This document shows, in pieces, positions 34,965 through 54,033 of a DNA stretch of 64,000 nt; position 1 is the first letter of the stretch, and each line of letters opens with the position of its first letter. The stretch spans positions 62,001 to 126,000 of the IMG/VR virus record IMGVR_UViG_3300009545_000018; one strand, 5' to 3'. A program made the translations under genes and the position numbers. The notes below the pieces were generated by a model that saw nothing but the letters and a program-made list of their open reading frames with translations, was not told the DNA's origin and ran no database searches.

Positions 34965-36155
34965 ATGCAAGTAATATATACTGGTGAAAAAATACCTAAG
35001 AAGATAACGAAATCAATATTTTTGGCTGGACCATCTGCTCGTCCTGGACAAGAAGATGAAGTAGCTCATTGGCGTCATGATGCTATTAAGATCTTAGAAG
35101 ATAAGGGGTTTGACGGAGTAATATTTAGTCCAGAAAATAGGGACGGTTCTTTTGGTAAGGATTTTGATTATGATGATCAAATAGATTGGGAAGATGAGTG
35201 TCTTAATATTGCTGATTGTATTTTGTTTTGGGTTCCACGAGATTTATCACTAGATTCTAATGGTAATTTGAAATTAGGAGGACTTACAACTAATGTGGAA
35301 TTTGGCGCATGGTGTAATTCTGGCAAAGTATTATTTGGTGCTCCCCCTAAAGCAGATAAAGTAAGATATTTACAACGTTATGCTGATACCTATAATTTAG
35401 GTAATTATGAAAATTTAACGGAACTATTACAGGCAGCTATAGATAAATTGGGAAATGGCGCTGAAAGAAATGAGGGGGAAAGATATGTTCCATTAATGAT
35501 TTGGAATACTCCATCTTTTCAATCTTGGTATACAGCGCAAACTAATGCTGGTAATGTCTTAGAGACTGCCAAATTATTATATTCTTTTCGACCCGGGTTT
35601 AAAGACTTTGTATTTCTCTGGATTCTTAAAGTTGAAGTTTATATTACATCAGAAAAAAGAAGCAAAACAAATGAATTTGTTCTCGCCAGAACAGATACAT
35701 CTTCTGTTGTTATGTGGTATCCAGAAGGTGAATCTATTGAGGAGAATTTAGTTGTCTTAATAAAAGAATTTAGATCTCCAGCATCTACGGAAGATGGTTT
35801 CATTTATGAAAATGCCGGCGGATCTTCTCATAATCCAAAAGAAGATGCTTTTGACACTGCTATTGAAGAAGTACACGAGGAGACAGGGCTTATGATTGAT
35901 AGTAAAAGATTAAAATCAATGCAATCTAGACAAGTCTGTGGAACATTATCTTCTCATAAAAATTATTTATATTCTTATCAATTAAATAAAGAAGAATTAG
36001 ATTGGCTAAAATCTCAAGATGGAATTGCTCATGGAGTAGAAGAAGATACGGAAAGATCTTTTGTTACTATTTCTAGTGTGGGAGAAATATTGCAAAGCAC
36101 TAATGTAGATTGGGCTAATTTGGGCGCTATATTATCAGTAATAGTTAAAAATTAA
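34965..36155 (+). CDS. nucleoside 2-deoxyribosyltransferase-like / NUDIX fusion
   Basis: IFLAGP, QIDWE, ILFWVPR, TNVEFG; C-terminal AGG..TAIEEVHEETG. Confidence 0.82.
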   Translation: MQVIYTGEKIPKKITKSIFLAGPSARPGQEDEVAHWRHDAIKILEDKGFDGVIFSPENRDGSFGKDFDYDDQIDWEDECLNIADCILFWVPRDLSLDSNGNLKLGGLTTNVEFGAWCNSGKVLFGAPPKADKVRYLQRYADTYNLGNYENLTELLQAAIDKLGNGAERNEGERYVPLMIWNTPSFQSWYTAQTNAGNVLETAKLLYSFRPGFKDFVFLWILKVEVYITSEKRSKTNEFVLARTDTSSVVMWYPEGESIEENLVVLIKEFRSPASTEDGFIYENAGGSSHNPKEDAFDTAIEEVHEETGLMIDSKRLKSMQSRQVCGTLSSHKNYLYSYQLNKEELDWLKSQDGIAHGVEEDTERSFVTISSVGEILQSTNVDWANLGAILSVIVKN

Positions 36156-36181
36156 ATCTATTAAAAATAACATATGTATTT

Positions 36182-36343
36182 ATGTTATTTGATAAAAGCA
36201 AACATGTTTTATTTAGATGTGAGTCTTGTGGAACAATTGTGTCTGTTGATTTTGAAGACGAAGATGATATTGAAAAGTTAGATGAAAATAAAATTGTATT
36301 AGAGTGCCCTTGTGGGGGAAGTTCCGAGATTTTAAGAAATTAA
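36182..36343 (+). CDS. small Zn-ribbon protein (below ORF-track cutoff)
   Basis: 53 aa, CESC...CPCG. Confidence 0.55.
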   Translation: MLFDKSKHVLFRCESCGTIVSVDFEDEDDIEKLDENKIVLECPCGGSSEILRN

Positions 36344-36433
36344 TTTTATAAATTATTAAGATATTGACAATATTGGCGAGCACCTTAAATTAGAGTGTGC
36401 CTAGATTATAAATTTACTATTACAGAAAATTAT

Positions 36434-36979
36434 ATGACTAATAACTCTTTCATAAATGAATTGTCTCAGTTGCGCCCTAATTCTACCTTTTTAGTCCTTA
36501 AAGGTTATCGAAATTCTTATTCTGAAGTTTCAGATTATAATATAGTTTTTAATGTTAATTATCAAAATGCATTGCAGAAAAGCATTAATTTTCTACAAAA
36601 TTATACGCCCCTTTCTTCTTTAGAAATTCAAGCAAAAGATGAATTAATTGCTAGTTATCAAAAATCTTTAACTAAAATGGAAACAATTCCATTTGAGGAA
36701 CTTGAAGATAATTATCTTCATTTTAAAGATGATAATGGAGATTATATTAAAGGGGTAAAGTATCATTTGAAATCTGATACTATTCATTTATATGGATTTG
36801 TGGTGCATAAAAAAATTATTATCCCAGGCAATTACCCCCAAGTTAATAAAAGGGAATTAACACTTGTTAAAGATAAATTATCTAAACTAACAATCGTATC
36901 AAAATTTAGACAATTTAAGATTGTACCAGAACAATTAGATTATATTAAAGTTAATAAATTAACAATATTTCCTGAATGA
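36434..36979 (+). CDS. hypothetical protein
   Basis: follows TTGACA promoter. Confidence 0.6.
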   Translation: MTNNSFINELSQLRPNSTFLVLKGYRNSYSEVSDYNIVFNVNYQNALQKSINFLQNYTPLSSLEIQAKDELIASYQKSLTKMETIPFEELEDNYLHFKDDNGDYIKGVKYHLKSDTIHLYGFVVHKKIIIPGNYPQVNKRELTLVKDKLSKLTIVSKFRQFKIVPEQLDYIKVNKLTIFPE

Positions 36980-37731
36980 GAACTATTAATAAATCTACAC
37001 TTGACTCTATTAAAATAAGGGTTGAAAAATTTCTTAATAAAAAAGATATTTTATTTTACGATTATGAAAATATGCGAGAAAATATTCTTTTTCTTATTAA
37101 AGAGAATGCTGTTCTTAAAGAAAAATTATTTGATTTAGAACAAGAATTGCCTGATGATAAACGTTGGGAAAACATTTTAGCTTCTAAATTAGAATTAGCA
37201 TTTTTAGAAAATGAAGCTAAAGAGTTCTTTGAAATAAATAATTCTATCAATAATCAAACATATACAATTATCATTCAGAAAAAGTTTGGGAAAACACCTA
37301 AACAACTTTTGAAATCTTCCGAGATTCGTCGTTTAAAAGCAATTAGAAAAATTGTAAGCTTACAAAAGCATATAATAGAATTACAAAAAACTTGCACCGA
37401 TTATAATAATCAAATTGGTGCTTTGACAAACATTGTAAGCAAACCTTTTCAAAATGATGAGTCTGTACGATTATCTCGACAAATTGTTGAGGCTGCGCTT
37501 CTTAAAGCACAACAATTAGCACATTCATTTAATACTCAGTTCATAAAATATGAAACTGTTAAATTACATAAATCATTTACAGCATCTTATTATGAAAGCT
37601 GGCGCCGTGCTTCTGACGCAGAAAGTCAAGTAGAAAAGTTGAAAAACGAAATTAGTAAAATAAAAAGAGTCATTTTGCAAAAGAAATATCCATTCTGTCG
37701 GATATATAAAGGAAGATTAAAGAAAAAATAA
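36976..37731 (+). CDS. coiled-coil hypothetical protein
   Basis: 251 aa. Confidence 0.55.
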   Translation: MRTINKSTLDSIKIRVEKFLNKKDILFYDYENMRENILFLIKENAVLKEKLFDLEQELPDDKRWENILASKLELAFLENEAKEFFEINNSINNQTYTIIIQKKFGKTPKQLLKSSEIRRLKAIRKIVSLQKHIIELQKTCTDYNNQIGALTNIVSKPFQNDESVRLSRQIVEAALLKAQQLAHSFNTQFIKYETVKLHKSFTASYYESWRRASDAESQVEKLKNEISKIKRVILQKKYPFCRIYKGRLKKK

Positions 37732-37823
37732 TTTTATTATTTGCAAAACCTTGACGGCAATATACAATGATTTAACTTGTTTGCCTCACAATTCGTTGAA
37801 TTTATTTCAAATATAAAAGGAGA

Positions 37824-39404
37824 TTGATTATGGTATCTAAAAATTTATTTAAGTCTACAGGTTCAGTTAAGAAAGCAATTAAACCAGTTAATGCTGTTAA
37901 TAATGCGGGCGGTGTGGCTTATACTATGGATGATAAGGCTGCCTTAGCGCAACTTGCCATGACTGGTTGTTTTAATGGAACTTATTATGTTGATGCTAAA
38001 GATCAACTTAATCAAGTTGTTGCTCTTGCTAATAAGCTTCCAGTAGAGTTCGTGGCAAAGTTAGCAGTATATGCTCGCCAAGAAGGTTTTATGAAGGATA
38101 TGCCTGCAGTATTAGCCGCAGTTGTTGCTAGCAAAGATACTGTTCTTTTATCCAAGATCTTTCCAAAGGTTATTGATAATCCAAAAATGGTTCGTAACTT
38201 TGTACAAGTTATTCGTTCTGGAGTAACAGGCAGAAAAAGTTTGGGAACCCGTCCTAAGAAATTAATTCAAAATTATTTGAATTCATTAACTGATGAGCAG
38301 TTGTTTAAGGCTGATGTAGGTAATAGCCCTTCATTACAAGATATTATTAAGTTAGCTCGTCCTAAGCCAGCTACTAAGAATCGCTCTGCTTTGTATGGTT
38401 ATTTGCTAGACAAGGAATATAATCCAGAAGACTTATGTTCCTTGGTTCAAGAGTTTGAATCTTTCAAAAAAGAAATGAGTTTGGATATTCCAAATGTTCC
38501 ATTTCAAATGTTAACAGCTTTGCCATTAACTGATAAGCATTGGAGCAAGATTGCTGAAAATGCAACCTGGAATCAAACCAGAATGAATTTAAATACTTTT
38601 GCTCGTCATAAGGTATTTGAAGATGCTACTACTTTAAACCTATTGGCTGAGAGATTAGCTGATTCTTCACAAATTGCAAAAGCAAAGGTATTCCCATATC
38701 AATTGTTTGCTGCATTTAAAAATGTAACTGCAGATGTTCCTAAGAAATTAACTAATGCTTTACAAAAAGCAGCGGATGCTTCGCTGGAAAATATTCCAGC
38801 TATTGAAGGTGAAGTTCACGTTTTAGTTGATGTATCAGGCAGCATGAGTAGCCCAGTCACTGGTAATCGTGGTTTTGTCACTAGTACTATGCGTTGTATT
38901 GATGTAGCAGCCTTAATGGCTTCTGCATTAATGCGCAAGAATGAAGATACTAAGGTATATCCATTTGATACTAGAGTTCATAATCATTCATTGAATCCAA
39001 TGGATTCAGTGATGACTAATGCGGCAACTCTTGCTGCATTTGGTGGTGGAGGAACTGATTGTGGTATGGCGTTAGAGAATTTAAATAAGCAGAAAGCCAA
39101 AGGCAATCTTGTTATTTATGTTTCTGATAATGAGTCTTGGGTAGATACTACTCCTAATTCCTATTATTCTCAAAGAGGTACTAAGGTAATGGAAGAGTGG
39201 AATAAATATAAAGCTCGTAATCCAAAAGCCAAATTGGTTTGTATTGATGTCACTCCTAATAAAACCACTCAAGCTCATAATAGAGAAGATATAATCAACA
39301 TTGCAGGATTTTCTGATCAAGTATTCGATGTTATTGCATTATTCCAAAAATTTGGCAATAATAAAGATCTTTGGGTTCAAACCATTGACTCAGTAGAAAT
39401 GTAA
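37824..39404 (+). CDS. rsr: Ro60 / TROVE-domain RNA-binding protein
   Basis: NNAGGVAY, LAQLAMTG.FNGTYY, YARQEGFMKDMP, MNLNTFARH, vWA DVSGSM, GGGGTDC, SDNESW. Confidence 0.93.
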   Translation: MIMVSKNLFKSTGSVKKAIKPVNAVNNAGGVAYTMDDKAALAQLAMTGCFNGTYYVDAKDQLNQVVALANKLPVEFVAKLAVYARQEGFMKDMPAVLAAVVASKDTVLLSKIFPKVIDNPKMVRNFVQVIRSGVTGRKSLGTRPKKLIQNYLNSLTDEQLFKADVGNSPSLQDIIKLARPKPATKNRSALYGYLLDKEYNPEDLCSLVQEFESFKKEMSLDIPNVPFQMLTALPLTDKHWSKIAENATWNQTRMNLNTFARHKVFEDATTLNLLAERLADSSQIAKAKVFPYQLFAAFKNVTADVPKKLTNALQKAADASLENIPAIEGEVHVLVDVSGSMSSPVTGNRGFVTSTMRCIDVAALMASALMRKNEDTKVYPFDTRVHNHSLNPMDSVMTNAATLAAFGGGGTDCGMALENLNKQKAKGNLVIYVSDNESWVDTTPNSYYSQRGTKVMEEWNKYKARNPKAKLVCIDVTPNKTTQAHNREDIINIAGFSDQVFDVIALFQKFGNNKDLWVQTIDSVEM

Positions 39405-39737: not shown

Positions 39738-40061
39738 ATGAAAACCATGTTGTTTGAAAAAACTATTAATTTAGTTAAAACTTTAAGAGAAACATTCACA
39801 ACTCGATGTTTACATAATCAAAAATTGCCCCTTTTTAGTTGGTTACATAGAAATTCTAGTAACTTTTCGAATGAAGAGTTTGAAGAGTTTTGGAAATTTT
39901 TAGTAATTTTATTTAAATATAAATATAAGGATATGAGCTTATTTTATGAAGCAGGAGAGTCTCCATTAGAAATGTTTGATTTTAGAGCAAACAAAGATCA
40001 AATCAATGACTTTATTTCTTTATTAGAAAATAAAATTAATAAATTGAAAGCTTTTATTTAA
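39738..40061 (+). CDS. small KAF-tag protein
   Basis: ends KLKAFI. Confidence 0.65.
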   Translation: MKTMLFEKTINLVKTLRETFTTRCLHNQKLPLFSWLHRNSSNFSNEEFEEFWKFLVILFKYKYKDMSLFYEAGESPLEMFDFRANKDQINDFISLLENKINKLKAFI

Positions 40062-40897
40062 TGATTAAAAGAAATGGTATTGAAATTAAGACTGCCCAAG
40101 CTCCAAATATAGTAGCAGCAAAAGATACTTTAAATATTCTTAAGAATAAAAATTATCTTGTTAAAGATAAGATCATAGATATTTCAGTGGCATTAGATAA
40201 TTCAATTAAAAATACTAAGTTATATTTGCCAGAAGATTGTTTTAATAGTAAAAATAATTTAATTAAACCTACTATAGAGGTAACAAATGAAACTACTACC
40301 TCTGCTGGGTTAAGATTATTAAATAGTGGTTTAGAAAATATTGTAGCTTTGAATTTTGCCTCAGCTAGAAATGTTGGGGGCGGATTTTTAGCGGGGGCAG
40401 TTGCCCAAGAAGAAGATTTGTGTCGGTGTTCTGGATTATATCTTTGTATTAAAAGCAAACCTATCTTTTATAATAAAAACATTTTATGTGATGATACTTT
40501 CTATACTAATCATATTATTTACTCACCCAATGTTCCTTTCTTTCGTAATGATAATCTAGATCTTTTAGAAGAGATATTCCACATTTCTATTATTTCTGCG
40601 CCCGCACCTAATGTTAGAGCTATGGAGAATGTTGATGAAGATAATTTAAGAAGCATATTAGAAATAAGGGCAGCTAGAATTTTACAGATTGCTATTGAAA
40701 ATAATCATGAAAATATTATCTTAGGAGCTTGGGGCTGTGGTGCTTTTGGTAATGATTCTAAAATGATAATTGAGGTTTTTCAAAAGGTATTAAATAGATA
40801 TCCTCATTTCAAACATGTTTGTTTTGCCGTCTTTGATAATAAAATAAATGCCCCTATTTTCAATGCATTTAAAGAAGCATTTGAAAATAATGAATGA
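40061..40897 (+). CDS. TIGR02452 / bacterial PARG-like ADP-ribose glycohydrolase
   Basis: LNFASARNVGGGF..GAVAQEEDLCRCS, LGAWGCGAFGND. Confidence 0.9.
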   Translation: MIKRNGIEIKTAQAPNIVAAKDTLNILKNKNYLVKDKIIDISVALDNSIKNTKLYLPEDCFNSKNNLIKPTIEVTNETTTSAGLRLLNSGLENIVALNFASARNVGGGFLAGAVAQEEDLCRCSGLYLCIKSKPIFYNKNILCDDTFYTNHIIYSPNVPFFRNDNLDLLEEIFHISIISAPAPNVRAMENVDEDNLRSILEIRAARILQIAIENNHENIILGAWGCGAFGNDSKMIIEVFQKVLNRYPHFKHVCFAVFDNKINAPIFNAFKEAFENNE

Positions 40898-41720: not shown

Positions 41721-41780
41721 ATTTATTTTAAATAACTGAAGATATATTTTTTCTTGCACTTCATTGGCAAGAGGATATTT

Positions 41781-42470
41781 ATGACAAAAGAAAATTATAC
41801 ATTAGTAGGCGTAGTAATAGATCGTAGCGGGTCTATGAGTTCATTAGTTTCTGATACAATTGGTGGATTTAATTCCCTTTTAAAAGAACAAAAAAACGAG
41901 CCTGGACAAGCTTCTGTTAGTTTATGTTTATTTAGTACAGATTATAAACTTACTCATTATGATGATATTAATCAGGTTGAAGAATTAAATGAAATTTCTT
42001 ATAGACCAGGTGGTGGTACTGCACTATTAGATGCTTTGGGTACTACAATTGATGAGATTGGAGTTAGATTAGCTGCTAAAAATGAAGAAGATAGACCATC
42101 TAAAGTAATTATTATAGTGATTACTGATGGTCAGGAAAATTCATCTAGAAAATATTCTAAAAATAAAATTAAAGAAATGATTTCTCACCAAGAAGAAAAA
42201 TATAATTGGTCATTTACTTTTATTGGCGCCAATATGGATGCAGTTAGTGCTGGCGACTCTATTGGGTTTTCTGCCAATAATTCTTATAATTATTCCGCTT
42301 CCGCTGGTGGGACTCAAAAAGTATATGCTACCATGAATAATTCTTTAAAAAGAGCTAGAGTTATGGGAAGTGGCATGAAATCTAATGAATCCTTATTTAC
42401 TCCAGAAGAGGCGCAAAGCTTATTAGATTCTGATAAAAAGGTGAAAGATAATGCAGAAAATAAGTCATAA
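41781..42470 (+). CDS. vWA-domain protein
   Basis: IDRSGSM MIDAS, GGTALLDA, ITDGQENSS. Confidence 0.88.
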   Translation: MTKENYTLVGVVIDRSGSMSSLVSDTIGGFNSLLKEQKNEPGQASVSLCLFSTDYKLTHYDDINQVEELNEISYRPGGGTALLDALGTTIDEIGVRLAAKNEEDRPSKVIIIVITDGQENSSRKYSKNKIKEMISHQEEKYNWSFTFIGANMDAVSAGDSIGFSANNSYNYSASAGGTQKVYATMNNSLKRARVMGSGMKSNESLFTPEEAQSLLDSDKKVKDNAENKS

Positions 42471-44167: not shown

Positions 44168-45170
44168 ATGGATCAAAAAGATTTAATAATACAAGAATTA
44201 CATAATATCATTTATAAATATGGCGTCAAAGCTTTAATGGAATTTGAGTCTAGGTTTCCGTGTGATCAATTAAGTTGTGTTAAAGTTCCATATAATCATA
44301 TTCCTAACAATTCAAAATTCATAGAGAGAAATTTTGGATATGGAATTTTTGTTTGGCAAGGAATTTCTTATAATGATGCATATTTATTTAGAATTCAATC
44401 ATATGAGAAATTTTGGATCGATTGGAATCAATTTAAACGTTATCTAGAATTATTAGCATTTACATGAAGACTAAAAAAGATATTGCAGATTTACTTCGAC
44501 CTATGCTTGAAAAATATGGAAGAGAATATCTTGTTAATTTTAACTTATTGATTAATAACGTTACTTGGGACGGCACTCTTAGTGAGTATGTTTCTATTCC
44601 TTTTAATAACATAAGTGAACACAGAGTTAATTGTAGTTCTTTTTTAGAGCTTAAACAACATATTAATAATTTAGAGATGAAAAGAACTTGGGGAAATTCG
44701 TGGACATATATTGAAGTTCCATCTGATTGTAATGATTTTTTTCATCTTAGAATTGATGGTGTTGAAAATTTTTACATTAAGTGGGAAAAATATCAAAGAT
44801 ACTTAAATTTGAAAGCTTTTATATAATGACAACAGAAGAAGATTTTAGAAAAAGTTTATCTTGTATTATTGAAAAATTTGGTCCAGAACATTTTAGTGTT
44901 ATTTTAACAATTGCACAAAATTCAAGCTTTTATTTTAAAAGTAAAAATATGTTATTAATACCATTTAAATCTAATTCTTCGTTTAAAAGAGTAAATGTTA
45001 AATATGAGGAGTGTGCCGCTGTTGTATGGAAAAATTATGCTAATCATAAATATTTTCCATTTCCTCCAGATTGTGATGATTGGTATTGTATGCTTGGTGA
45101 TTCTTTTGAAAGTATACTAACTCTGTATAATGTTGGTAGCAAAATGATAAAAATGAAAGCTTTTATATAA
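44168..45170 (+). CDS. array of three KAF-tag proteins (44168-44467, 44464-44826, 44826-45170)
   Basis: ends ELLAFT, NLKAFI, KMKAFI; mutually similar N-termini. Confidence 0.7.
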
Positions 45171-45664
45171 TGACAATTGGAATATTTGCTGGCAGTTTTG
45201 ATCCTATTACTTTAGGGCATTTAGATATTATAAATCGTAGTTTAACTTTTTTAGATAAATTAATAGTGTTAATAGCAGTTAACCCAAATAAGAAAACCAC
45301 TTTCTCTTTAAATAAAAGAAAATCTTTAATTATAGAGAGTCTTTTCGAAACATCAACGAGATCTGCAGATGTTATAGTGGATTCATATGATGGATTGGTT
45401 GTTAATTATGCTAAGTTACATGGAGCTTCAGTTTTGATTAGAGGTGTTCGTACCTCAACAGATTTTGAATATGAAACTAATTTAGCTAATGGTAATAGAT
45501 TATTAGCACCAGAGATTGAAACTGTCTTTATACCAACTCGTCCAGAATTATCTGTAGTATCTTCTTCCATGGCTAAAGAAATTAATAAATGGAATGGTGA
45601 TGTATCTAAATTAGTTACAGTTAAAGTTAAAAATGCTCTGAATGAAATTGTGAGTTTAAAATGA
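45170..45664 (+). CDS. coaD: phosphopantetheine adenylyltransferase
   Basis: AGSFDPITLGHLDII, IRGVR..DFEYE, VSSSMAKE. Confidence 0.93.
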   Translation: MTIGIFAGSFDPITLGHLDIINRSLTFLDKLIVLIAVNPNKKTTFSLNKRKSLIIESLFETSTRSADVIVDSYDGLVVNYAKLHGASVLIRGVRTSTDFEYETNLANGNRLLAPEIETVFIPTRPELSVVSSSMAKEINKWNGDVSKLVTVKVKNALNEIVSLK

Positions 45665-45935: not shown

Positions 45936-45963
45936 TTGACAACAAGTAAGTCGGAGTTATAAT
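45936..45963 (+). promoter_or_regulatory. sigma70-like promoter
   Basis: TTGACA-N16-TATAAT. Confidence 0.75.
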
Positions 45964-46302: not shown

Positions 46303-46374
46303 TGAATCAAATGCAGATAAGATTACATTTAACAGTTAATTAAAAAAGCATCTTATCAATAATTTGTTGATTCA
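46303..46374 (+). ncRNA. scaffold-family ncRNA copy A
   Basis: TGAATCAA/TTGATTCA, GATAAGAT/ATCTTATC, ATGC and TACATT motifs. Confidence 0.7.
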
Positions 46375-46380
46375 TTTAAT

Positions 46381-46464
46381 GCCGTAGTTGGACAGTGTGG
46401 TGAGTCCAAGACGCTGTAAACGTCCCGGTAAACTTTGTAGGTTCGATTCCTACCTGCGGCACCA
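46381..46464 (+). tRNA. tRNA-Tyr(GTA)
   Basis: loop CT-GTA-AA, long variable arm, ACCA. Confidence 0.9.
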
Positions 46465-46518
46465 AAAGATAAAGCAAAGTAATTTGCCTTGTTATTTGAC
46501 AACTTAATAGTTATGTAT

Positions 46519-46593
46519 TGGGTAGTAATGTCAACCTGGTAGACGCCTCCGTTTGGATCGGAGAAGTTGCGAGTTCAAATCCCGCCTACCCAA
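46519..46593 (+). tRNA. tRNA-Pro(TGG)
   Basis: CTCCG/CGGAG stem, TT-TGG-AT; no encoded CCA. Confidence 0.85.
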
Positions 46594-46653
46594 CAAATAT
46601 AAATGATTTCATATAGTTAGCAAAGCCAAAGTATTTGGTCAACAAAGTATGGT

Positions 46654-47622
46654 TTGAACTGTTATATATTCTGTATGATTGTCATACAGAAACGATCTTT
46701 TTCTTTAGAAGAGTTAAGAGAAATATTCAAAAGTTCATTGTCAAAGCAAGATGTTGCCATAAAGTTAGGTTTTACTTATAGTAATGGGAAAGTTTATAAA
46801 AAAATTGAGAAACTTTCTATTGAATATAATTTATCGACGGATCATTTTGATCCATTTTTAAGTCAAAGATTAAATACAAAATTTCCTAAAATAGAAAAAG
46901 AATGTCCTATATGCGGTAATTTATTTGAAACTAAACATGGACATCGTGATGAAAAAATTACTTGCTCAATATCATGCTCTAATACTTATTTTGCTCCTAG
47001 TAAACACACTGAATTATCAAATTTAAAAAGATCGTTAAAGCTTTTAAAAAATTCAAAAAATGAAACTGTCAATATAATAAAAGTTCGTAAAAAACGTAAA
47101 AAGAATTTTAAATTAAAAGCTGTTGTTTTATATATTAAGTCTTGTGAATTTTGTGATTATGATTTTGAAACTTATAATAAAAATAAAAGATTTTGCAATA
47201 TATCATGTCAAATCAAACATAATTGGGAAGATCCCAATTATCGTATTAATATTATAAATAAAGCTAATGAAAGAGTTACAAATGGAACCCATAATGGGTG
47301 GTCATCAAGATCAAAACTAAAACCTTCTTATGCTGAACAATATGTTATCAATCTTTTAGATGAGTTAAAAATAACAAATATTACTCGAGAATACAAAATT
47401 AACAAATGGTTTATTGATTTTGCTGATATAGATAGAAAATTAGCTTTAGAAATAGATGGTAAACAACATGAATTACCAGAACGTAAGGCTTCGGATCAAG
47501 TTAAAGATCAATATTTAAAAGATAATGGTTGGACCATTTTAAGAATAAAATGGAAAAAGATAACAGCAGAATTTAGAGAAGAATTAATAAAAGTTTTGCA
47601 AAATTTCACAAGGATCATATAA
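46654..47622 (+). CDS. homing endonuclease, Vsr/DUF559-like
   Basis: CPIC and CxxC Zn motifs, IDFAD..LALEIDGKQH..D..L..GWTILRIKW. Confidence 0.82.
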   Translation: MNCYIFCMIVIQKRSFSLEELREIFKSSLSKQDVAIKLGFTYSNGKVYKKIEKLSIEYNLSTDHFDPFLSQRLNTKFPKIEKECPICGNLFETKHGHRDEKITCSISCSNTYFAPSKHTELSNLKRSLKLLKNSKNETVNIIKVRKKRKKNFKLKAVVLYIKSCEFCDYDFETYNKNKRFCNISCQIKHNWEDPNYRINIINKANERVTNGTHNGWSSRSKLKPSYAEQYVINLLDELKITNITREYKINKWFIDFADIDRKLALEIDGKQHELPERKASDQVKDQYLKDNGWTILRIKWKKITAEFREELIKVLQNFTRII

Positions 47623-48026
47623 TGAATTTTAAAGATGCTCAAGACAAGTTTGATAATGAAATTAAATCAAAATCAACTATTGTAACACATAATAAAAATG
47701 CTGTAAATCAATATAGATGTTTCGACGCTGGTCTTGTCTTAAGAACGTTAAGACAACTATCTATTTCGAATCATATAGTTGATTTATATAATTTTTTTAC
47801 ATCACATCCATTTAAAATTAATAATACTTCAGATTTAGATAATTTAAGAAATAAAATTAAACTTGCAAACCAAGATTTGAGTAAATTTAGGGAGGTGGAG
47901 TTTAATTCTTATAAAGTAATAAATGAATCTTTGATTTTATCAATTGAAAAAGATATAGAATTTATTATTTCTTCTTTTAAAGAATTAGAAAAAGCTCTAC
48001 GTGATATACAAGATTCAGAAATTTAA
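47622..48026 (+). CDS. hypothetical protein
   Basis: ORF track. Confidence 0.5.
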   Translation: MNFKDAQDKFDNEIKSKSTIVTHNKNAVNQYRCFDAGLVLRTLRQLSISNHIVDLYNFFTSHPFKINNTSDLDNLRNKIKLANQDLSKFREVEFNSYKVINESLILSIEKDIEFIISSFKELEKALRDIQDSEI

Positions 48027-48053
48027 TATTACAACATTAAAGGAAAACACAAC

Positions 48054-48215
48054 ATGAACGAAATAACTGATTTAAAACCGTATTTAAAATATAACAATGG
48101 CGTGGTTACCGTCTTGAAGGTATTAGCCTTCCCATTAAACTGGGTAGCTGATGTATTCGAAAATTGGAGTCGCAAGCGCACACAAAAGAAATGTGAAAAG
48201 TGGCTATCTGAATAA
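48054..48215 (+). CDS. small hypothetical protein (53 aa)
   Basis: AAGGA SD, MNEITDLKPYL...WLSE. Confidence 0.5.
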   Translation: MNEITDLKPYLKYNNGVVTVLKVLAFPLNWVADVFENWSRKRTQKKCEKWLSE

Positions 48216-48319
48216 TTTTATACTACTAGAGTAGTATTCTTTTATCTATACTGGTTGAGTTACCCAGCTAAAATATAAACTTCCAGGCACGGTAGCCTGG
48301 TTAATCAAAACCGATTTAT

Positions 48320-48397
48320 AGGCTTCTAGCTTAACTTTTAGAGCAAGGGACATAAAGAGTCCCGTGGATCTTGGTGTAAATCCAAGGGAGCCTGCCA
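48320..48397 (+). tRNA. atypical tRNA-like RNA (loop AT-AAA-GA)
   Basis: AGGCTTC/GGAGCCT+GCCA, GGGAC/GTCCC, T-loop TGTAAAT, D-loop lacks GG. Confidence 0.65.
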
Positions 48398-48402
48398 TTT
48401 AT

Positions 48403-48484
48403 TGCGGGGTAGAGGAGTATGGTTATCTCACCAGCCTCATAAGCTGTGGTATACGTGGGTTCAAATCCCACCCTTCCGCAACCA
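48403..48484 (+). tRNA. tRNA-Met(CAT)
   Basis: CT-CAT-AA loop, TTCAAAT T-loop, ACCA; slightly irregular acceptor junction. Confidence 0.8.
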
Positions 48485-48552
48485 CTGGATGGTGGTTACC
48501 AAATCCGCAAAGGGGTATAGAAATATACTCGGAGGATTGAATCCACTATTAT

Positions 48553-48687
48553 GCAATTCTGGTATAATGGCATTACTGACTCTAAAAAGAGTATCACTTA
48601 CAAAGAAACCTGTGAGGCTACCAGGAAATTATTGTAAGAATAACGCCTTGCCTGGCGTAGATGTTGGTTCGATTCCAACGGATTGCA
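48553..48687 (+). ncRNA. tRNA-like RNA with multi-hairpin central insertion
   Basis: GCAATTC/GGATTGC, D arm, GTTGG-TTCGATT-CCAAC; about 80 nt of hairpins replace anticodon/variable arm. Confidence 0.6.
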
Positions 48688-48691
48688 TTAA

Positions 48692-48782
48692 GTGATGTTT
48701 GATAAGTAATCACGCCAGAAACATGATTTATCATGTTTGCCCTGATCAGCCTGGTAGTTAGGTGCAAATCCTAAGCATCACA
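48692..48782 (+). ncRNA. tRNA-like RNA with branched anticodon arm
   Basis: GTGATGT/GCATCAC, TTAGG-TGCAAAT-CCTAA, AAACATGA/TCATGTTT hairpin inside CCAG/CTGG. Confidence 0.55.
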
Positions 48783-48798
48783 ACAACTGAGTTTATAT

Positions 48799-49079
48799 GC
48801 CCGAATCCCTATATTGGTTAAGACATATAGACAATAGTCCGGTCTTAGGCTACCATTAAGGAGTAATCCTTTTAGAGACCACTGCTTCGGTGTGGGCAAA
48901 CCCGGCATTTAGGTGGAAAGCCTAATAAATTTTGCTTGATTAAATAGTTTCTTGCTACAAGATCAACGGTGTACAACGAATCTTGCTATTTAATTGGGAA
49001 GTCTTATAATTGTGGACTTGGTGAAACAGGTATAAGGCGAATTACGCTCGATATTGGATAAAACTAACATTGGGCGCCA
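48799..49079 (+). ncRNA. 281-nt structured RNA ending in GCCA
   Basis: GCCCGA/TTGGGC terminal stem plus GCCA; GTAA, cTTCGg, GCAA tetraloops. Confidence 0.55.
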
Positions 49080-49143
49080 TGAATCAAATCCGTATAGGAA
49101 TACATTCGGAAAAAATAAATCTTATACACTACTTGTTGATTCA
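49080..49143 (+). ncRNA. scaffold-family ncRNA copy B
   Basis: TGAATCAA/TTGATTCA, GTATAGGA/TCTTATAC, TACATT. Confidence 0.7.
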
Positions 49144-49148
49144 ATTAT

Positions 49149-49225
49149 TGTCGATTAGCTCATCGTTAGAGCGCCCGGCCGTAAGAGTCTGGAGGTACTA
49201 GGTTCAATTCCTAGATCGACAACCA
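49149..49225 (+). tRNA. tRNA with irregular anticodon arm (Thr-CGT-like, uncertain)
   Basis: TGTCGAT/ATCGACA+ACCA, good D and T arms; loop region CCGTAAGAGT. Confidence 0.65.
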
Positions 49226-49337
49226 TGTAACAAATGCCAGGGCAGCATTACATTTATTGGAATTAAATCCGATGAGGCTCGACTCCTCTTAAGGTCCGGT
49301 GACAGGCAAAACATGTTGCTCATTATTTGTTGTTACA
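49226..49337 (+). ncRNA. scaffold-family ncRNA copy C
   Basis: TGTAACAA/TTGTTACA, GGCAGCAT/ATGTTGCT, TACATT; cargo includes GAGG-CTCGACT-CCTC. Confidence 0.7.
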
Positions 49338-49465
49338 AATTTTTGACAGTATATCTAAACTGTATAGTGTGAGTTATGCGCAAGGGATAATTACCTAAGT
49401 AGCAACTATAGGTTTGCTAGTTAATCCTACACATGAATCAGAGTTAACCTGAAAACTAGCACAAT

Positions 49466-49539
49466 GCGAGTATGGCATAATGGTTGTGTCCCATGTTTCC
49501 AACTTGGTTATCTCAGTTCGATTCTGAGTACTCGCTCCA
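49466..49539 (+). tRNA. tRNA-Gly(TCC)
   Basis: GCGAGTA/TACTCGC, T73, TT-TCC-AA, CCA. Confidence 0.9.
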
Positions 49540-49591
49540 TGCCCACTAACTTAATTACATAAAAGTAAGGTTGTCGGGGCGCCAAATTTAC

Positions 49592-49666
49592 GTTCTGGTC
49601 GTCTAAATAATTAGGACATCTCCGCGAAAGGGGAAGATATTGGAGAATTACCAATCTGGAGCGCCA
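49592..49666 (+). ncRNA. non-canonical tRNA-like RNA
   Basis: GTTCTGG/CTGGAGC+GCCA, T-loop AGAATTA, anticodon loop GCGAAA. Confidence 0.6.
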
Positions 49667-49753
49667 TAAGTTAGTGGCTGGAAATCATTTAAGCGAGTTC
49701 AAATGCAATAACAGTCCGCCTAATTGCTCGTATATTAGGTAACTTAATTTTAT

Positions 49754-49830
49754 GCCCCTGTCGTCGTAAAAAGTCAGGACATCTCCAGTAATAGGAGAAG
49801 ATGTTGGAGAATTGCCAACTGGGGGTGCCA
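49754..49830 (+). ncRNA. non-canonical tRNA-like RNA, paralog of 49592-49666
   Basis: GCCCCTG/TGGGGGT+GCCA, TCTCC/GGAGA, T-loop AGAATTG. Confidence 0.6.
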
Positions 49831-50132
49831 AAGGCAAGTAAGGACCAGGAAGCCTTATGAGCTGCTGGTTTTTCATATAGGGAACTAGCCTGGTTAGTCC
49901 TATATGAGAACCAACCAATGTCTTTAAATAAAGAAATTTATATAAGGACACCATGATTAATTTGTGCAGCTGACTTATATTGGATTTCGCGATCTGATAT
50001 ATGAGTGCTGGAAAATACGGAAAGTTGGAAAACTGATGCACACCGTATAAGTTAACTAAATCACTAACTGTTATTATCTACGCGAATAGATAAAAACAAA
50101 GTAATTAGTTAATTATAATTAATCAAAAACTT

Positions 50133-50226
50133 TAGCAAATGCAGTAAGGATTACATTGGTTATAGTCAATCGAAAGATTGATGGTGGGTATCGATTCCCA
50201 CAGTATCTTTACAAAACTTGTTGCTA
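50133..50226 (+). ncRNA. scaffold-family ncRNA copy D
   Basis: TAGCAA/TTGCTA, GTAAGGAT/ATCTTTAC, TACATT; cargo GNRA hairpin plus GTGGG-TATCGATT-CCCAC. Confidence 0.7.
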
Positions 50227-50230
50227 TTAT

Positions 50231-50367
50231 TCCGAGGTACGTCTAATGGTAAGACACGCGGCTGTGGGAACTATAGGTTAATAATAAGTCCCGTTCGATT
50301 CGGGCAGTTCCAAGAATAACCGCGCGGTGGTAACACTTTGTAGGTTCGAGTCCTACCCTCGGAGCCA
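50231..50367 (+). tRNA. tRNA-Asn(GTT)-like gene with 51-nt insertion in the anticodon
   Basis: TCCGAGG/CCTCGGA+GCCA; CGCGG-CTGT[50266-50316]TAA-CCGCG. Confidence 0.75.
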
Positions 50368-50392
50368 TTATATTAAATAAAAGGAAAGTACT

Positions 50393-50554
50393 ATGCAAGT
50401 TCAAATACATCTTTACAATCAATCCAATCCTATTGTGTTGGAACATGTAACTAATGCTTATCAAAAAGGTGATTTTTATTGTGTTATGTTTGCTAGTAAA
50501 CTAGTTCAAAAGTTTCCAATTCAACATATATTTAGAATAATAGAAACTCCTTAA
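50393..50554 (+). CDS. small hypothetical protein (53 aa)
   Basis: AAGGA SD, MQVQIHLYNQSNPI... Confidence 0.55.
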   Translation: MQVQIHLYNQSNPIVLEHVTNAYQKGDFYCVMFASKLVQKFPIQHIFRIIETP

Positions 50555-50557
50555 TGT

Positions 50558-51330
50558 ATGATTTCAAAATTAACAATCAAATCTTATGGAGTGACAGTAA
50601 CTCTTCCCAGTGAAATTCTAATTTTAGAAGATTGTATCTGGGCTAAAACTGGTGAACATTTAGCTTTAGGAAAAGACAAAAATATTATGGGTAATGATTG
50701 TTTTATTGTCCTTAGAAAAAACGGAGTTGTTATTTCTGGACCTTCTCCTTTAATTCATTCGGTTGGAGCAAATAGTTTAATTTATCAAGAGTGTTCGGTA
50801 GAAAAATATTATAAAATGAAAGCATTTTTGTAATGATCAAATATGTTGATGATAACGGTAAAGAAAAAATTTTACCTGAAAAAATAGTTATACTAAAATG
50901 TCCTGATAGTTGGCTTATTGAGCCTGGAGATTATATAGAATTTATTCATACATATTATCTTCATATGAGGATCTCCAGCTTTGAAATCAAAGTTTTAAAA
51001 GGATATCATAAGAATAAAATATTTGATTTACTCTTTAGTCATTTATCTAAGATTGAATATGTAAGCATAGAAAAGTTTGAAAAACTAAAGGCGTTTGTTT
51101 AAATGGAAACCAAGTGGATTTTAGTAACACAACAAAACTCTGTTTACTATAATAAAATCTTAGAATTAAAAGAAGGTTGGACATCAACCATTTATAATGG
51201 GACTATTGTTTGGTTTATTGAGTCAGTAAATGGTCAAGTTAGACATTATCCGGATTGGTTTGAGTTAAACGATTTGCCAACACATACAGTAGTAACAAAG
51301 GATGCCCTTAATTTATTAGCCTTTTTATAA
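50558..51330 (+). CDS. array of three KAF-tag proteins (50558-50833, 50833-51102, 51103-51330)
   Basis: ends KMKAFL, KLKAFV, NLLAFL. Confidence 0.7.
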
Positions 51331-51336
51331 AAAACT

Positions 51337-51579: not shown

Positions 51580-51591
51580 TTAACTTTTCAT

Positions 51592-51720
51592 TTAAATGAA
51601 TGCCGATTCGGGAATACATTAAACACAAAGATACTGCAGCATGTGCCAGGCTAATCCACATGTACCTTAGGAGTACTCAGGGTAAAGTGTACCGACTTCT
51701 CAATCACCTTTGTCATTTAA
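51592..51720 (+). ncRNA. scaffold-family ncRNA copy H
   Basis: TTAAATGA/TCATTTAA, ATGCC, GATTCGGGAA/TTCTCAATC (imperfect), TACATT, TTTG. Confidence 0.62.
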
Positions 51721-51721
51721 C

Positions 51722-52962
51722 ATGAATTACTTAAAACACACATTAGATAACGGCACAGTATTAGAAATACCAGAAGAATTTATGGTATTAGATAATTTAC
51801 CATCAGAAGATCTACATTACAAAGTAGAATTAATTCTTGATTTTATTAGAGGCTGGGTATTTAAAATAACCCATATAAATGGTTTAGAACTAACTCAATA
51901 TAAAGAAGATCCAACATGGATTTGTTATTTTAGTCCAGAAAAGATTTTTAATAAAAAAATTATACCATGTTCACTTGAAAAATTTAACAATATGAAAGCA
52001 TTTTTATAATGTCAAAAGAAGAAAAACCATTATCACCTTATGAGATAAGAAGATTAGGTCATTGCAAAGAAACAGAGCAGTGTGTTGATGATCTATATTG
52101 TAATTGTCCTTGTTTACCTTGTTCTAAGCAAGATTGTTTTAGACCAGGATGTAAATGTGGTAGAACTCATCCATATAAAAATTAATGTACTTACATATCC
52201 ATGATAAAGATGTTCCATCTTCTATTTTAGTTTTAGAAGACTCAAAAACTCACACCATTGAAAAGAATTCTCATTTTGTTTTTAGAAAAATTAAGTATAA
52301 TGAATATTGTGTTGATTTTTTTAATGGTAAAGATAATCGTTATTCTTATGCAAGATATTCAGAAGATGATTTATATCGTATGTTTTTTGATGGCAAATTA
52401 AAATATAAAGAATTTTCTTTAGCCCAGTTTAATAAAATAAAAGCATTTTTATGAAATATTATATTATTGAGGATACAGTAGTTCCAAGTGAGTTCATTAT
52501 AATTCATGATACAGATTTATGTAGAATTTATAATATTTATCCAGAGTTTAATAGAAATATTTATACTCATAAGAATTTTTTTGATTATATAAGCTACGAT
52601 CTTGATTATAATTTTATTTCGATTGCTACCATGCCAGGCAGTCAATTACTAAGTTATATTGATAATAATAAGTTATTTCCAATAGAAAAGTTTAATAGTT
52701 TAAAGGCTTTCTTATGAAATATATTCAAACTGCTAAATATAATTATCCAGAAGAAATATTTGTAACACAAAGTTTCTTTAGACACGAGTGGACTAATAAA
52801 CACTTGGTATTAAAACAATATAATGAATATGTATTAAGTGTATTTTTAATAAATGGGGAAGAGCCCTCACATCCAATGGCTATTACCAATAATTTCATTC
52901 ATGAGGCTAATTTTTTAGAAATGTCTTTAGAAAGATATTTAAAGATTAAATCTTTCTTATAA
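51722..52962 (+). CDS. four KAF-tag proteins (51722-52009, 52185-52454, 52451-52717, 52714-52962) and a Cys-rich 58-aa ORF (52009-52185)
   Basis: ends NMKAFL, KIKAFL, SLKAFL, KIKSFL; overlapping start/stops. Confidence 0.7.
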
Positions 52963-52985
52963 TAACTTGATATATAGTAATTCAT

Positions 52986-53516: not shown

Positions 53517-53586
53517 ATGGACAAATTAGATAAGGATTACATTTTATTGGAAAAACAAACATCTTTGTCAACTACTTGTTGTCCAT
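53517..53586 (+). ncRNA. scaffold-family ncRNA copy E
   Basis: ATGGACAA/TTGTCCAT, GATAAGGAT/ATCTTTGTC, TACATT. Confidence 0.7.
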
Positions 53587-53589
53587 TAT

Positions 53590-53859: not shown

Positions 53860-53862
53860 CTA

Positions 53863-54013
53863 TGAAAACAAATGCCCGTACAAGGATTACATTCATTATA
53901 GGAACGTGAAGAAAGTTCGATTCTTTCCGCAGCGACCAAACTAAAAACAATTGCTGCGTGGTGTATTGGTTAACACACGAAAAAAACATCTTTGTCAATT
54001 TTTGTTGTTTTCA
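53863..54013 (+). ncRNA. Y RNA-like ncRNA: scaffold copy F with circularly permuted tRNA domain
   Basis: TGAAAACAA/TTGTTTTCA, ACAAGGAT/ATCTTTGT; inside: T arm, CGCAGCG-ACCA, linker, TGCTGCG, D arm. Confidence 0.78.
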
Positions 54014-54033
54014 ATTATTTAAATAGGTGAAAC

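What the first reader, a model, noticed from the sequence alone, without database searches (positions are those of the whole stretch)
37751..39404. Phage-encoded Ro60 with its own promoter
Seen: a full TROVE+vWA protein behind TTGACG-N16-TAACTT and an AAGGAG SD. Established: bacterial Ro60 (Rsr) works with Y RNAs in structured-RNA decay and is often linked to RtcB RNA repair; some phages carry it. Of interest here is that the same window offers eight candidate partner RNAs and many damaged-tRNA-like substrates. Inference: an RNA quality-control or anti-tRNase system.
Basis: partly seen in the sequence, partly recalled or inferred. Interest (0 to 1): 0.7.

Follow-up and report, generated by a model that had tools for sequence, protein, structure and literature searches.

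The report
Huge-phage Ro60 with Y-like RNAs
A 448-kb soil phage encodes a genuine Ro60 RNA-binding ring protein, and its likely partner "Y RNAs" (seven in this window) lie several kilobases away, packed between the phage's tRNA genes; this is a known kind of system in a new arrangement.

Summary
ATG 37830 to stop 39404 encodes a 524-aa Ro60/Rsr orthologue. It has a TROVE ring and a vWA domain with a MIDAS motif, and its model matches all solved Ro60 structures (TM 0.64-0.75). AAGGAG lies 7 nt before the ATG. TTGACG-N16-TAACTT is weak by itself, but five relatives carry a TTGACG/TTGACA box and a -10 box in the same place.

Phage Ro60 is already known (Chen 2014, Iyer 2021, Hu 2025), so the gene is a new member of a known kind.

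What I add:
- Rfam finds no YrlA here. A model built from YrlA RNAs next to related Ro60 genes finds seven Y-like RNAs on the same strand at 46304-54014, inside the tRNA array. Five abut a tRNA within 4 nt. Their two-helix core shows strong covariation.
- The Ro60 leader carries a conserved, covarying hairpin that resembles stem 1 of these RNAs. This suggests autoregulation.
- In this all-viral clade Ro60 lies in a conserved block with PARG, an NMNAT-like enzyme and the tRNA array. In three relatives an Rnl2 RNA ligase lies next to it or one gene away.
- The genome has no RtcB and no PNPase. It has three Rnl2 ligases.

RNA binding and the biological role are untested.

The parts
37751..37778 (+). 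Candidate sigma-70-type promoter TTGACG-N16-TAACTT of the Ro60 gene
   Evidence: The sequence is shown. The -10 box is weak and lies below the scan threshold. Orthologous TTGACG/TTGACA plus TATAAT-like boxes occur in L007, L008, L010, L121 and L123.
37796..37810 (+). Conserved leader hairpin UUGAA-uuuau-UUCAA, flanked by G and AU, ending 6 nt before the SD. It resembles stem 1 of the Y-like RNAs.
   Evidence: All 10 clade members can form it. The fourth pair is A-U in 5, G-C in 4 and U-A in 1. The motif occurs at only 11 sites in 895,526 genome positions.
37817..37822 (+). Shine-Dalgarno AAGGAG, 7 nt before the ATG
   Evidence: conserved in relatives.
37830..39404 (+). Ro60/Rsr orthologue, 524 aa (P0001): TROVE HEAT-repeat ring plus vWA domain with MIDAS motif DVSGS at residues 334-338
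   Evidence: The AF2 model (pLDDT 84.8) matches all solved Ro60 structures with TM 0.64-0.75. D334, S336, G337 and S338 are invariant in 46 homologues.
46304..46376 (+). Mini Y-like RNA (73 nt), 1 nt after one tRNA and 4 nt before tRNA-Tyr
   Evidence: R1 29.0 bits; R2 66.7 bits (training member); the MFE fold gives the two-helix architecture; tRNA gaps.
49081..49145 (+). Mini Y-like RNA (65 nt), 3 nt before tRNA-Leu
   Evidence: R1 17.2 bits; R2 60.5 bits (training member); fold z -2.6.
49227..49339 (+). Y-like RNA (113 nt) with a T-arm-like hairpin, 1 nt after tRNA-Leu
   Evidence: R1 22.0 bits, E 5e-5; the MFE fold keeps both helices.
50132..50230 (+). Y-like RNA (99 nt), directly abutting the insertion-bearing tRNA-like gene at 50231
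   Evidence: R1 32.2 bits; R2 41.3 bits and not in the R2 training set; fold z -3.2.
51593..51722 (+). Probable Y-like RNA (130 nt, UGAAUGC motif); weaker call
   Evidence: R1 17.6 bits, E 0.001; found by the motif scan; the MFE fold keeps stem 1 and stem 2.
53518..53588 (+). Mini Y-like RNA (71 nt)
   Evidence: R1 21.3 bits; R2 58.6 bits (training member).
53865..54014 (+). Full YrlA-like RNA (150 nt): Ro-binding-type stem plus T arm, closed 'acceptor' stem and D-like arm; 4 nt after a tRNA
   Evidence: R1 42.4 bits, E 2e-11, over the full model. Note that a tandem tRNA pair elsewhere in the genome scores as high. Here the non-tRNA stem motif is also present.
45936..45963 (+). Perfect TTGACA-N16-TATAAT just upstream of the tRNA/Y-RNA array; a candidate array promoter
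   Evidence: 12 of 12 consensus matches, the best site between 34000 and 46500.
34965..37731 (+). Conserved upstream neighbours: a Nuc_deoxyri_tr2-like protein (396 aa), a 181-183-aa protein of unknown fold family (36434-36976) and a 251-aa protein
   Evidence: Pfam. The same gene order is seen in relatives. For P0122, AF2 gives pLDDT 84 with no PDB match.
40061..40897 (+). Microbial-type poly(ADP-ribose) glycohydrolase, a conserved downstream neighbour
   Evidence: PARG_cat_microb 4e-44. It lies near Ro60 in L121, P0010 and P0022.
45170..45664 (+). Cytidylyltransferase-like (NMNAT-type) protein, the last conserved gene before the tRNA array
   Evidence: CTP_transf_like 2.9e-19. It occupies the same position in L120, L121, P0010, P0017 and P0022.

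Best explanation
The ORF is a functional phage Ro60 (Rsr) orthologue. It belongs to a lineage that exists in viruses only and is inherited among very large AT-rich phages.

Shown here:
- The Ro60 fold and motifs are present.
- A family of Y-like RNA genes carries a covarying two-helix core homologous to the Ro60-binding module of bacterial YrlA/YrlB.
- These RNA genes are interleaved with tRNA genes on the same strand.
- The gene order is conserved.

Inferred:
- Ro60 is transcribed from its own sigma-70-type promoter as the first gene of a small operon.
- The Y-like RNAs are transcribed with the tRNA array and cut out by the tRNA-processing enzymes (RNase P and the 3' processing nucleases), because most of them abut a tRNA.
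- Ro60 binds their [C/U][A/G]AAUGC stem to form RNPs.
- The RNPs act on structured or damaged RNAs, above all tRNAs, during infection. They would do so either by handing them to, or shielding them from, the host 3'-5' exonuclease PNPase, or by cooperating with the phage Rnl2 ligases in tRNA repair.
- The leader hairpin, which looks like a closed copy of Y stem 1 just before the SD, lets free Ro60 repress its own translation.
For: Identity of the protein:
- Pfam, PHROG and PDB sequence hits.
- The AF2 model matches human and Xenopus Ro60, Deinococcus Rsr and phiLo Ro60 over the full length.
- 79 invariant columns in 46 homologues, including the MIDAS motif.
- phiLo RNA-contact residues K141/K142, R173 and R178 align with K143/K144, K174 and K179.

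Viral lineage:
- The window's protein lies in a 100/100 clade of 10 viral sequences, inside a 95/95 all-virus clade of 15.

Y-like RNAs:
- Model R1, built from four YrlA RNAs, finds window hits at 42.4, 32.2, 29.0, 22.0, 21.3, 17.6 and 17.2 bits. All lie on the + strand in the tRNA array.
- R2, run over the whole window with filters off, finds nothing credible elsewhere.
- On 12 mini-Y RNAs, 88% of cells pair against 64% in shuffles. 13 of 15 pairs show compensatory change. The covariation score is 0.742 against 0.256 (0 of 500 shuffles reach it), and slid controls score at most 0.22.
- Independent MFE folds agree for 6 of 7.
- All eight clade loci that reach the tRNA array contain such RNAs, and 17 of 21 abut a tRNA within 6 nt.
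- Related phages L020 and L011, and bacteria, have YrlA directly after Ro60.

Context:
- An Rnl2 ligase lies next to or one gene from Ro60 in three relatives, and PARG and an NMNAT-like gene are conserved.
- The genome holds three Rnl2 ligases, PNK-like kinases and a CCA-adding-type enzyme.

Precedent:
- phiLo Ro60 binds phage Yrl RNAs and host PNPase (PMC12135203).
Against: - There are no expression or binding data. The only run that holds this DNA is a DNA metagenome.
- Rfam YrlA finds nothing in the window at E up to 5, or in the genome beyond a tandem-tRNA artefact.
- The nearest Y-like RNA is 6.9 kb from Ro60, outside the 4-kb rule of Chen 2014.
- The canonical CGAA is CAAA in most window copies, and single CGAA changes weakened phiLo binding 3- to 4-fold.
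- R1 E-values are rough, and a tandem tRNA pair scores 42.8 bits.
- RtcB and PNPase are absent from the phage, so any nuclease partner must be a host protein, and the host is unknown.
- The resemblance of the leader hairpin to the Y stem was noticed after the fact.
Confidence: 0.62

Rival explanations
1. The Ro60-Y RNP mainly sequesters or inhibits the host's PNPase, as shown in vitro for Thermus phage phiLo. This would protect phage transcripts and tRNAs, or blunt PNPase-dependent defences. It would not serve quality control or repair.
For: phiLo Ro60 plus Yrl RNAs form ternary complexes with host PNPase and attenuate its activity (PMC12135203). This phage has no PNPase of its own. Several copies of Y-like RNA would suit a titration mechanism.
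Against: The host and its PNPase are unknown. The conserved neighbours (Rnl2 ligase in relatives, PARG, NMNAT-like gene, tRNA array) point to RNA or tRNA maintenance. The tRNA-like effector domain is missing from the mini forms.
Confidence: 0.25
2. Ro60 acts without dedicated phage Y RNAs. The 'Y-like' elements would then be spacers or processing signals of the tRNA array, or degenerate tRNA-derived repeats, and only look like YrlA.
For: Rfam does not recognise them. They lie 7-16 kb from Ro60. tRNA arrays contain many structured spacers, and tandem tRNAs can fool YrlA models (Chen 2014).
Against: The mini forms contain no tRNA-like part, yet they score through the stem motif alone. The motif AAUGC...GGAUUACAU...UUGU(C/U)G is shared with genuine YrlA next to Ro60 in bacteria and in phage L020. 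The G-C to A-U change is compensated. Covariation is strong. Every clade locus that reaches the tRNA array carries them.
Confidence: 0.1
3. The leader hairpin has nothing to do with Ro60 binding. It would be a generic 5' stabiliser, an RNase site, or a DNA operator for a phage regulator.
For: It is short (5-6 bp). Similar AT-rich hairpins occur elsewhere in the genome (11 sites). The A-U form in the leader does not track the C-G form of the Y RNAs in L003 and L007.
Against: It is conserved at the same place in 10 of 10 relatives while the flanks diverge, and the pairs show compensatory change, which favours RNA. Both strands and both flanks match Y stem 1 (AAUUCGUUGA against AAUUUGUUGA; UCAAAUAU against UCAAAUGC). 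Relative L009 carries a complete mini-Y in the same leader position.
Confidence: 0.5

Closest known systems
Bacterial Ro60 (Rsr) with YrlA/YrlB Y RNAs (Salmonella, Mycobacterium, Rhizobium; Chen et al. 2014, PMC4201824; Rfam RF02553)
   Same: The protein architecture and fold are the same. The RNAs have a terminal stem carrying the (G)NCGAAUG-type motif. The longer ones add a T arm, a closed acceptor-like stem and a D arm. RNA and protein genes are on the same strand, and bacteria also carry several copies.
   Different: Protein identity is about 48-53% and the phage protein sits in a separate all-viral clade. The RNAs score below Rfam's threshold, mostly carry CAAAUGC with a compensating change, lie 7-16 kb from the gene inside a tRNA array, and mostly abut tRNAs. 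There is no sigma-54/RtcR promoter and no RtcB. The relatives' bacterial loci mostly show TGGCAC-N5-TTGC promoters.
Thermus phage phiLo Ro60 with Yrl1/Yrl2 (Hu et al. 2025, PMC12135203; PDB 9kop, 9l5y)
   Same: It is a phage-encoded Ro60 with phage-encoded stem-bulge-stem Y-like RNAs bearing a CGAA-type motif, and the phage has no PNPase. The fold match is TM 0.64-0.73. Four of eight mapped basic RNA-contact residues are kept.
   Different: Sequence similarity is low (phmmer E 2.3e-14; 19% identity in the structural alignment). In phiLo the Yrl RNAs lie immediately upstream of the gene. Here they are dispersed among tRNAs, and the leader keeps only a stem-1-like hairpin.
'Ro-like RNA binding protein' of actinobacteriophages and TROVE proteins of jumbo phages (Iyer et al. 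2021, PMC7824862); Myxococcus phage Mx1 TROVE protein
   Same: The family is the same: 164 phage records match. Mx1 is the closest named phage (50% identity). Its gene also lies among tRNAs, with a vWA protein and a SLOG-type protein nearby.
   Different: Actinophage proteins are only 20-24% identical. No convincing Y-like RNA was found within 6 kb in Mx1 with my model.

Membership tests
Ro60/Rsr (TROVE + vWA) | N-terminal TROVE HEAT-repeat ring | tested here: met
   Pfam TROVE 7.9e-8; PHROG 850 over residues 21-508; AF2 model TM 0.64-0.75 to 1yvp, 2i91, 2nvo, 9kop and 9nfa over about 500-550 columns.
Ro60/Rsr (TROVE + vWA) | C-terminal vWA domain with MIDAS motif DxSxS | tested here: met
   vWA_Ro60 1.4e-15. 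DVSGS at residues 334-338 aligns with DVSGS of phiLo and is invariant in 46 homologues.
Ro60/Rsr (TROVE + vWA) | Basic Y-RNA-binding surface | tested here: inconclusive
   phiLo residues K141/K142, R173 and R178 align with K143/K144, K174 and K179. R137, R163, R169 and K193 do not align with basic residues. The GRKSLG..PKK stretch is near-invariant.
Ro60/Rsr (TROVE + vWA) | Binds Y RNA and misfolded RNA | not testable with these tools
   Complex prediction did not fold the protein-RNA job. No RNA data exist.
Ro60/Rsr (TROVE + vWA) | Y RNA gene within about 4 kb on the same strand (Chen 2014 criterion) | tested here: not met
   The strand is the same, but the nearest Y-like RNA starts 6.9 kb after the stop and the farthest 14.5 kb after it.
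rsr-yrlBA-rtcBA RNA repair operon | RtcB ligase linked to Ro60 | tested here: not met
   No PF01139 match in the 447,763-bp genome, while 10 of 14 control genomes matched.
YrlA (Rfam RF02553) | Score at or above the Rfam gathering threshold (69 bits) | tested here: not met
   No YrlA match at E up to 5 in the window. The best genome hit, 22 bits, is a tandem tRNA pair. The positive control worked on L069, L083 and L075.
YrlA/YrlB Y RNAs | Terminal helix from the 5' and 3' ends with the GNCGAAN0-1G motif on the 5' strand | tested here: inconclusive
   The helix is present and covaries. The motif is CAAAUGC in most window copies, UGAAUGC in 51593 and CGAAUGC in the copy at genome 135811. The G-to-A change is compensated by C-to-U on the 3' strand.
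YrlA/YrlB Y RNAs | tRNA-like module (T arm, closed acceptor-like stem, D arm) in at least one Y RNA per genome | tested here: met
   53865-54014 aligns to all model elements, with T arm GAAAG-UUCGAUU-CUUUC. Relatives L120, L121 and L006 have clear T and D arms.

The most novel reading that the evidence does not exclude
In a lineage of very large phages, the Ro60-Y RNA system has been built into the phage's own tRNA factory in three ways. First, multiple mini and full Y RNAs are produced as 'punctuation' between tRNAs and released by tRNA-processing enzymes. Second, Ro60 senses the free Y-RNA pool through a Y-stem mimic in its own mRNA leader and tunes its translation. Third, the RNP works with neighbouring Rnl2 ligase, PARG and NAD-salvage-type enzymes as a phage-borne tRNA maintenance and counter-defence module.
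Probability: 0.3. Interest if true: 0.65.

Novelty: new member of a known kind. Interest (0 to 1): 0.45.

Why it matters
The role of bacterial and phage Ro60 is still poorly defined. A viral lineage that keeps Ro60, seven to eight Y-like RNAs, tRNAs, RNA ligases and ADP-ribose- and NAD-related enzymes together gives a compact system to test three things: what Ro60-Y RNPs do during infection, how Y RNAs are made, and whether Ro60 controls its own synthesis.

The work also shows that Rfam's YrlA model misses a sizeable set of viral and bacterial Y-like RNAs. Bacterial relatives carry tandem arrays, mostly below the Rfam threshold.

Tried and rejected
- Rfam scans of the window and genome found tRNAs only and no YrlA.
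- megablast and blastn against named phages found no close relative.
- Complex prediction of Ro60 with the 73-nt RNA was not folded by the tool. It is no evidence either way.
- The search for sequencing runs found one DNA rhizosphere metagenome and no RNA, so expression could not be checked.
It was uninformative.
- The conserved 181-aa upstream protein has 24 homologues only and no Pfam or PHROG hit. Its confident AF2 model has no PDB match and one unnamed-function AFDB cluster at TM 0.78. Its function remains unknown.
- The protein-atlas look-up gave only sub-threshold leads.
- Bacteroides-type promoter motifs, checked by eye, do not fit the leader.
- Bacterial rsr leaders mostly lack the hairpin. 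L030, L048 and L067 carry CGAATG close to the SD, which is suggestive only.
- Mx1 shows no convincing Y-like RNA within 6 kb.
- The idea that the long tRNA-model hit at 50231-50364 is itself a Y RNA was rejected. It has normal tRNA order with free acceptor ends. It is recorded in passing.
Full report
**Observation.**
The window is bases 62001-126000 of a 447,763-bp IMG/VR virus record. CheckV rates the record complete, its GC content is about 30%, and ARAGORN finds 37 tRNA genes. The only sequencing run that holds it is a rhizosphere DNA metagenome.

- TTGACG at 37751-37756, a 16-nt spacer and TAACTT at 37773-37778.
- AAGGAG at 37817-37822, 7 nt before ATG 37830.
- An open frame to the stop at 39404, giving 524 aa.

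**Identity of the protein.**
- Pfam gives vWA_Ro60 at 1.4e-15 and TROVE at 7.9e-8.
- PHROG 850 'RNA-binding protein' covers residues 21-508.
- The protein aligns over its length with the Ro60 of Thermus phage phiLo (2.3e-14) and with Deinococcus Rsr (5.2e-12). The MIDAS motif DVSGS is shared.
- An AlphaFold model (pLDDT 84.8) matches every solved Ro60 with TM 0.64-0.75. These are human, Xenopus, Deinococcus and phiLo. Nothing else matches beyond isolated vWA domains.
- Among 46 homologues down to 48% identity, 79 columns are invariant.
- Four of the eight basic residues that contact RNA in phiLo are retained, as K143/K144, K174 and K179. They include the two with the largest effect in phiLo (K142 and R178).

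This is a bona fide Ro60.

**Relatives.**
- At least 7,997 proteins match at E <= 1e-10. The best is 81% identical, and many sit on contigs of 200-500 kb.
- 164 named phage records encode a homologue. The nearest is Myxococcus phage Mx1 at 50%.
- Bacterial relatives are about 48-53% identical. They come from Planctomycetota, Pyrinomonadaceae, Rhizobiaceae and Oxalobacteraceae.
- In a maximum-likelihood tree the window's protein lies in a 100/100 clade of ten viral sequences. That clade sits inside a 95/95 clade of fifteen, all viral, with bacteria elsewhere.

The gene is therefore a long-standing viral lineage and not a recent capture from a host.

**Promoter.**
The -10 box matches TATAAT at 3 of 6 positions. 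Promoter-like sites in this AT-rich DNA are hardly above shuffled expectation.

Orthologous leaders support it. L007, L008, L010 and L121 carry TTGACG-N16-TATAAT or TATTAT. The closest relative with DNA, L123, has TTGACA and a TAATAT box. No terminator-like site separates Ro60 from the next ORFs. It probably heads a small operon.

**Partner RNAs.**
Rfam's YrlA model finds nothing in the window at E up to 5. In the whole genome it finds only a tandem-tRNA artefact. The model itself works:
- It finds YrlA directly after rsr in three bacterial relatives.
- It scores 64.9 bits, just under threshold, 12 nt after Ro60 in the related phage L020.

I built model R1 from those four RNAs.
- In bacteria it detects tandem arrays of YrlA-like RNAs after rsr.
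- In the window it detects seven elements, all on the Ro60 strand and all inside the tRNA array. They are 53865-54014 (42.4 bits), 50132-50230 (32.2), 46304-46376 (29.0), 49227-49339 (22.0), 53518-53588 (21.3), 51593-51722 (17.6) and 49081-49145 (17.2).
- An eighth lies at genome 135811-135884, just after a tRNA-Gly.

The elements share this layout: a terminal 7-bp helix, [C/U][A/G]AAUGC, a second helix, GGAUUACAU, a variable centre, AUCU..., CAAnnnUUGU(C/U)G, and the returning helix strand. The centre is either absent ('mini' form, like YrlB) or holds a T arm, a closed stem and a D-like arm (like YrlA). The bacterial CGAAUGC/UUGUCG becomes CAAAUGC/UUGUUG, a compensated G-C to A-U change.

Evidence that the structure is real:
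- On twelve mini forms from seven phages, 88% of cells pair against 64% in shuffles.
- 13 of 15 pairs show changes on both sides.
- The covariation score is 0.742 against 0.256, reached by 0 of 500 shuffles. Slid controls score at most 0.22.
- Minimum-free-energy folds reproduce the architecture for six of the seven.
- A second model built from the mini forms, run over the whole window without filters, finds no credible copy outside the array and none on the minus strand.

One caution applies. A tandem tRNA pair scores 42.8 bits with R1. The longest element therefore rests on its non-tRNA stem motif as much as on its score.

**Arrangement.**
All eight clade loci that reach the tRNA array contain such RNAs. 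Of 21 elements, 17 abut a tRNA gene within 6 nt on one side. In the window the figure is five of seven. For example, 46304-46376 lies 1 nt after one tRNA and 4 nt before tRNA-Tyr.

A perfect TTGACA-N16-TATAAT lies at 45936-45963, just before the array. The simplest reading is that the Y-like RNAs are co-transcribed with the tRNAs and released by tRNA-processing enzymes. This is inference.

**Leader hairpin.**
All ten clade members have a hairpin, G-UUG-N(1-3)-loop-N'-CAA-AU, that ends 3-8 nt before the SD (6 nt in the window). The fourth pair is A-U in five, G-C in four and U-A in one, while the surrounding sequence diverges.

In the window the hairpin is at 37796-37810. Its 5' half with flank, AAUUCGUUGA, resembles the 3' strand of Y stem 1 (AAUUUGUUGA). 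Its 3' half, UCAAAUAU, resembles the 5' strand (UCAAAUGC). The motif occurs at 11 sites in 895,526 genome positions. By my estimate the chance of one in a given 60-nt leader is about 7e-4.

In the more distant relative L009 a complete mini-Y RNA occupies the leader, ending 33 nt before the ATG. I therefore propose that Ro60 binds its own leader and represses translation. This was noticed after the fact and is untested.

**Gene context.**
The clade keeps this order:
- a Nuc_deoxyri_tr2-like protein (weak NUDIX hit in one relative)
- a 53-aa protein
- a 183-aa protein
- sometimes a 250-aa protein
- Ro60
- sometimes an Rnl2 ligase or an R2K ATP-grasp protein
- a microbial PARG
- a GIY-YIG protein
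- further genes, then a CTP_transf_like protein
- the tRNA array

An Rnl2 RNA ligase follows Ro60 directly or one gene later in three relatives. In the window that slot holds two small ORFs.

The genome inventory is:

| Feature | Result |
|---|---|
| Rnl2 ligases | three, elsewhere in the genome |
| AAA_33 (PNK-like) kinases | two over the cut-off |
| CCA-adding / poly(A) polymerase family | two |
| RtcB | none |
| RNase PH (PNPase) domain | none |

The 183-aa neighbour has a confident model but no known fold relative.

**Mechanism.**
- Best supported: Ro60 forms RNPs with the phage's own Y-like RNAs.
- Less certain is what the RNPs do. The context favours maintenance or repair of the tRNA pool during infection. 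The only experimental phage precedent (phiLo) shows recruitment and attenuation of host PNPase (PMC12135203).
- The two are not exclusive. I rank tRNA and structured-RNA handling with a host nuclease or the phage ligases first, and pure PNPase titration second.

**Comparison and novelty.**
Phage Ro60 with Y RNAs was reported in 22 phages (PMC4201824), noted in jumbo phages (PMC7824862) and solved structurally (PMC12135203). The gene is therefore a new member of a known kind.

The distinctive points are these:
- There are several Y-like RNAs.
- They are displaced from Ro60 into the tRNA array.
- Most abut tRNA genes.
- They carry a variant motif that Rfam misses.
- The Ro60 leader has a hairpin that mimics Y stem 1.
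- The neighbours are RNA-ligase, PARG and NAD-related genes where bacteria have RtcB.

Interest is moderate.

Noticed in passing
window 48552-48688 and 50231-50367 (also 24090-24203, weak): These tRNA-like genes have canonical acceptor, D and T arms and long variable arms, but carry 44-51-nt insertions in the anticodon loop. The insertion at 50231 holds its own T-arm-like hairpin CCCG-UUCGAUU-CGGG. They are too short for group I introns, so the identity of these genes and how they are processed are unknown.
   Followed up: partly
genome G000:C1:212881-213035 (outside the window): Two tandem tRNAs have a CUA anticodon (amber-suppressor type; ARAGORN labels them Pyl). This may hint at stop-codon reassignment in part of the genome. 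Ro60 itself is open under table 11.
   Followed up: no
window 9686, 34197, 40032, 41691, 45141, 50804, 51980: A 33-nt repeat family lies at the 3' ends of small ORFs, around ...AAATTGAAAGCTTTTATTTAATGA. It suggests a family of small paralogous proteins that share a C-terminal tail and stop-start overlaps.
   Followed up: no
window 14679-16298: A 539-aa ORF has blastn similarity to lysyl-tRNA synthetase genes (lysU) annotated in other phage records. It may be a phage-encoded aminoacyl-tRNA synthetase.
   Followed up: no
window 41754-42470: A stand-alone vWA-domain protein (PHROG 7371, 1e-55) lies 2.3 kb downstream of Ro60. Myxococcus phage Mx1 also has a vWA protein near its Ro60.
   Followed up: partly
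L024-L103 (bacterial loci), just downstream of rsr: Bacterial relatives carry tandem arrays of roughly two to six YrlA-like RNAs after rsr. Many score far below Rfam's 69-bit threshold. Several leaders show sigma-54-type TGGCAC-N5-TTGC promoters.
   Followed up: partly
L016 8635-9050, L020 7928-8324, L021 987-1360: tmRNA genes lie within about 1 kb of Ro60 in L016 and L020, and about 4.6 kb upstream in L021. All three are more distant viral relatives. The window's genome has no tmRNA by ARAGORN.
   Followed up: no
window 48480-50230: An unusually long, GC-richer non-coding stretch in the tRNA array holds further structured segments beyond the Y-like RNAs and tRNAs called here, for example the weak hit at 48941-48995.
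   Followed up: partly
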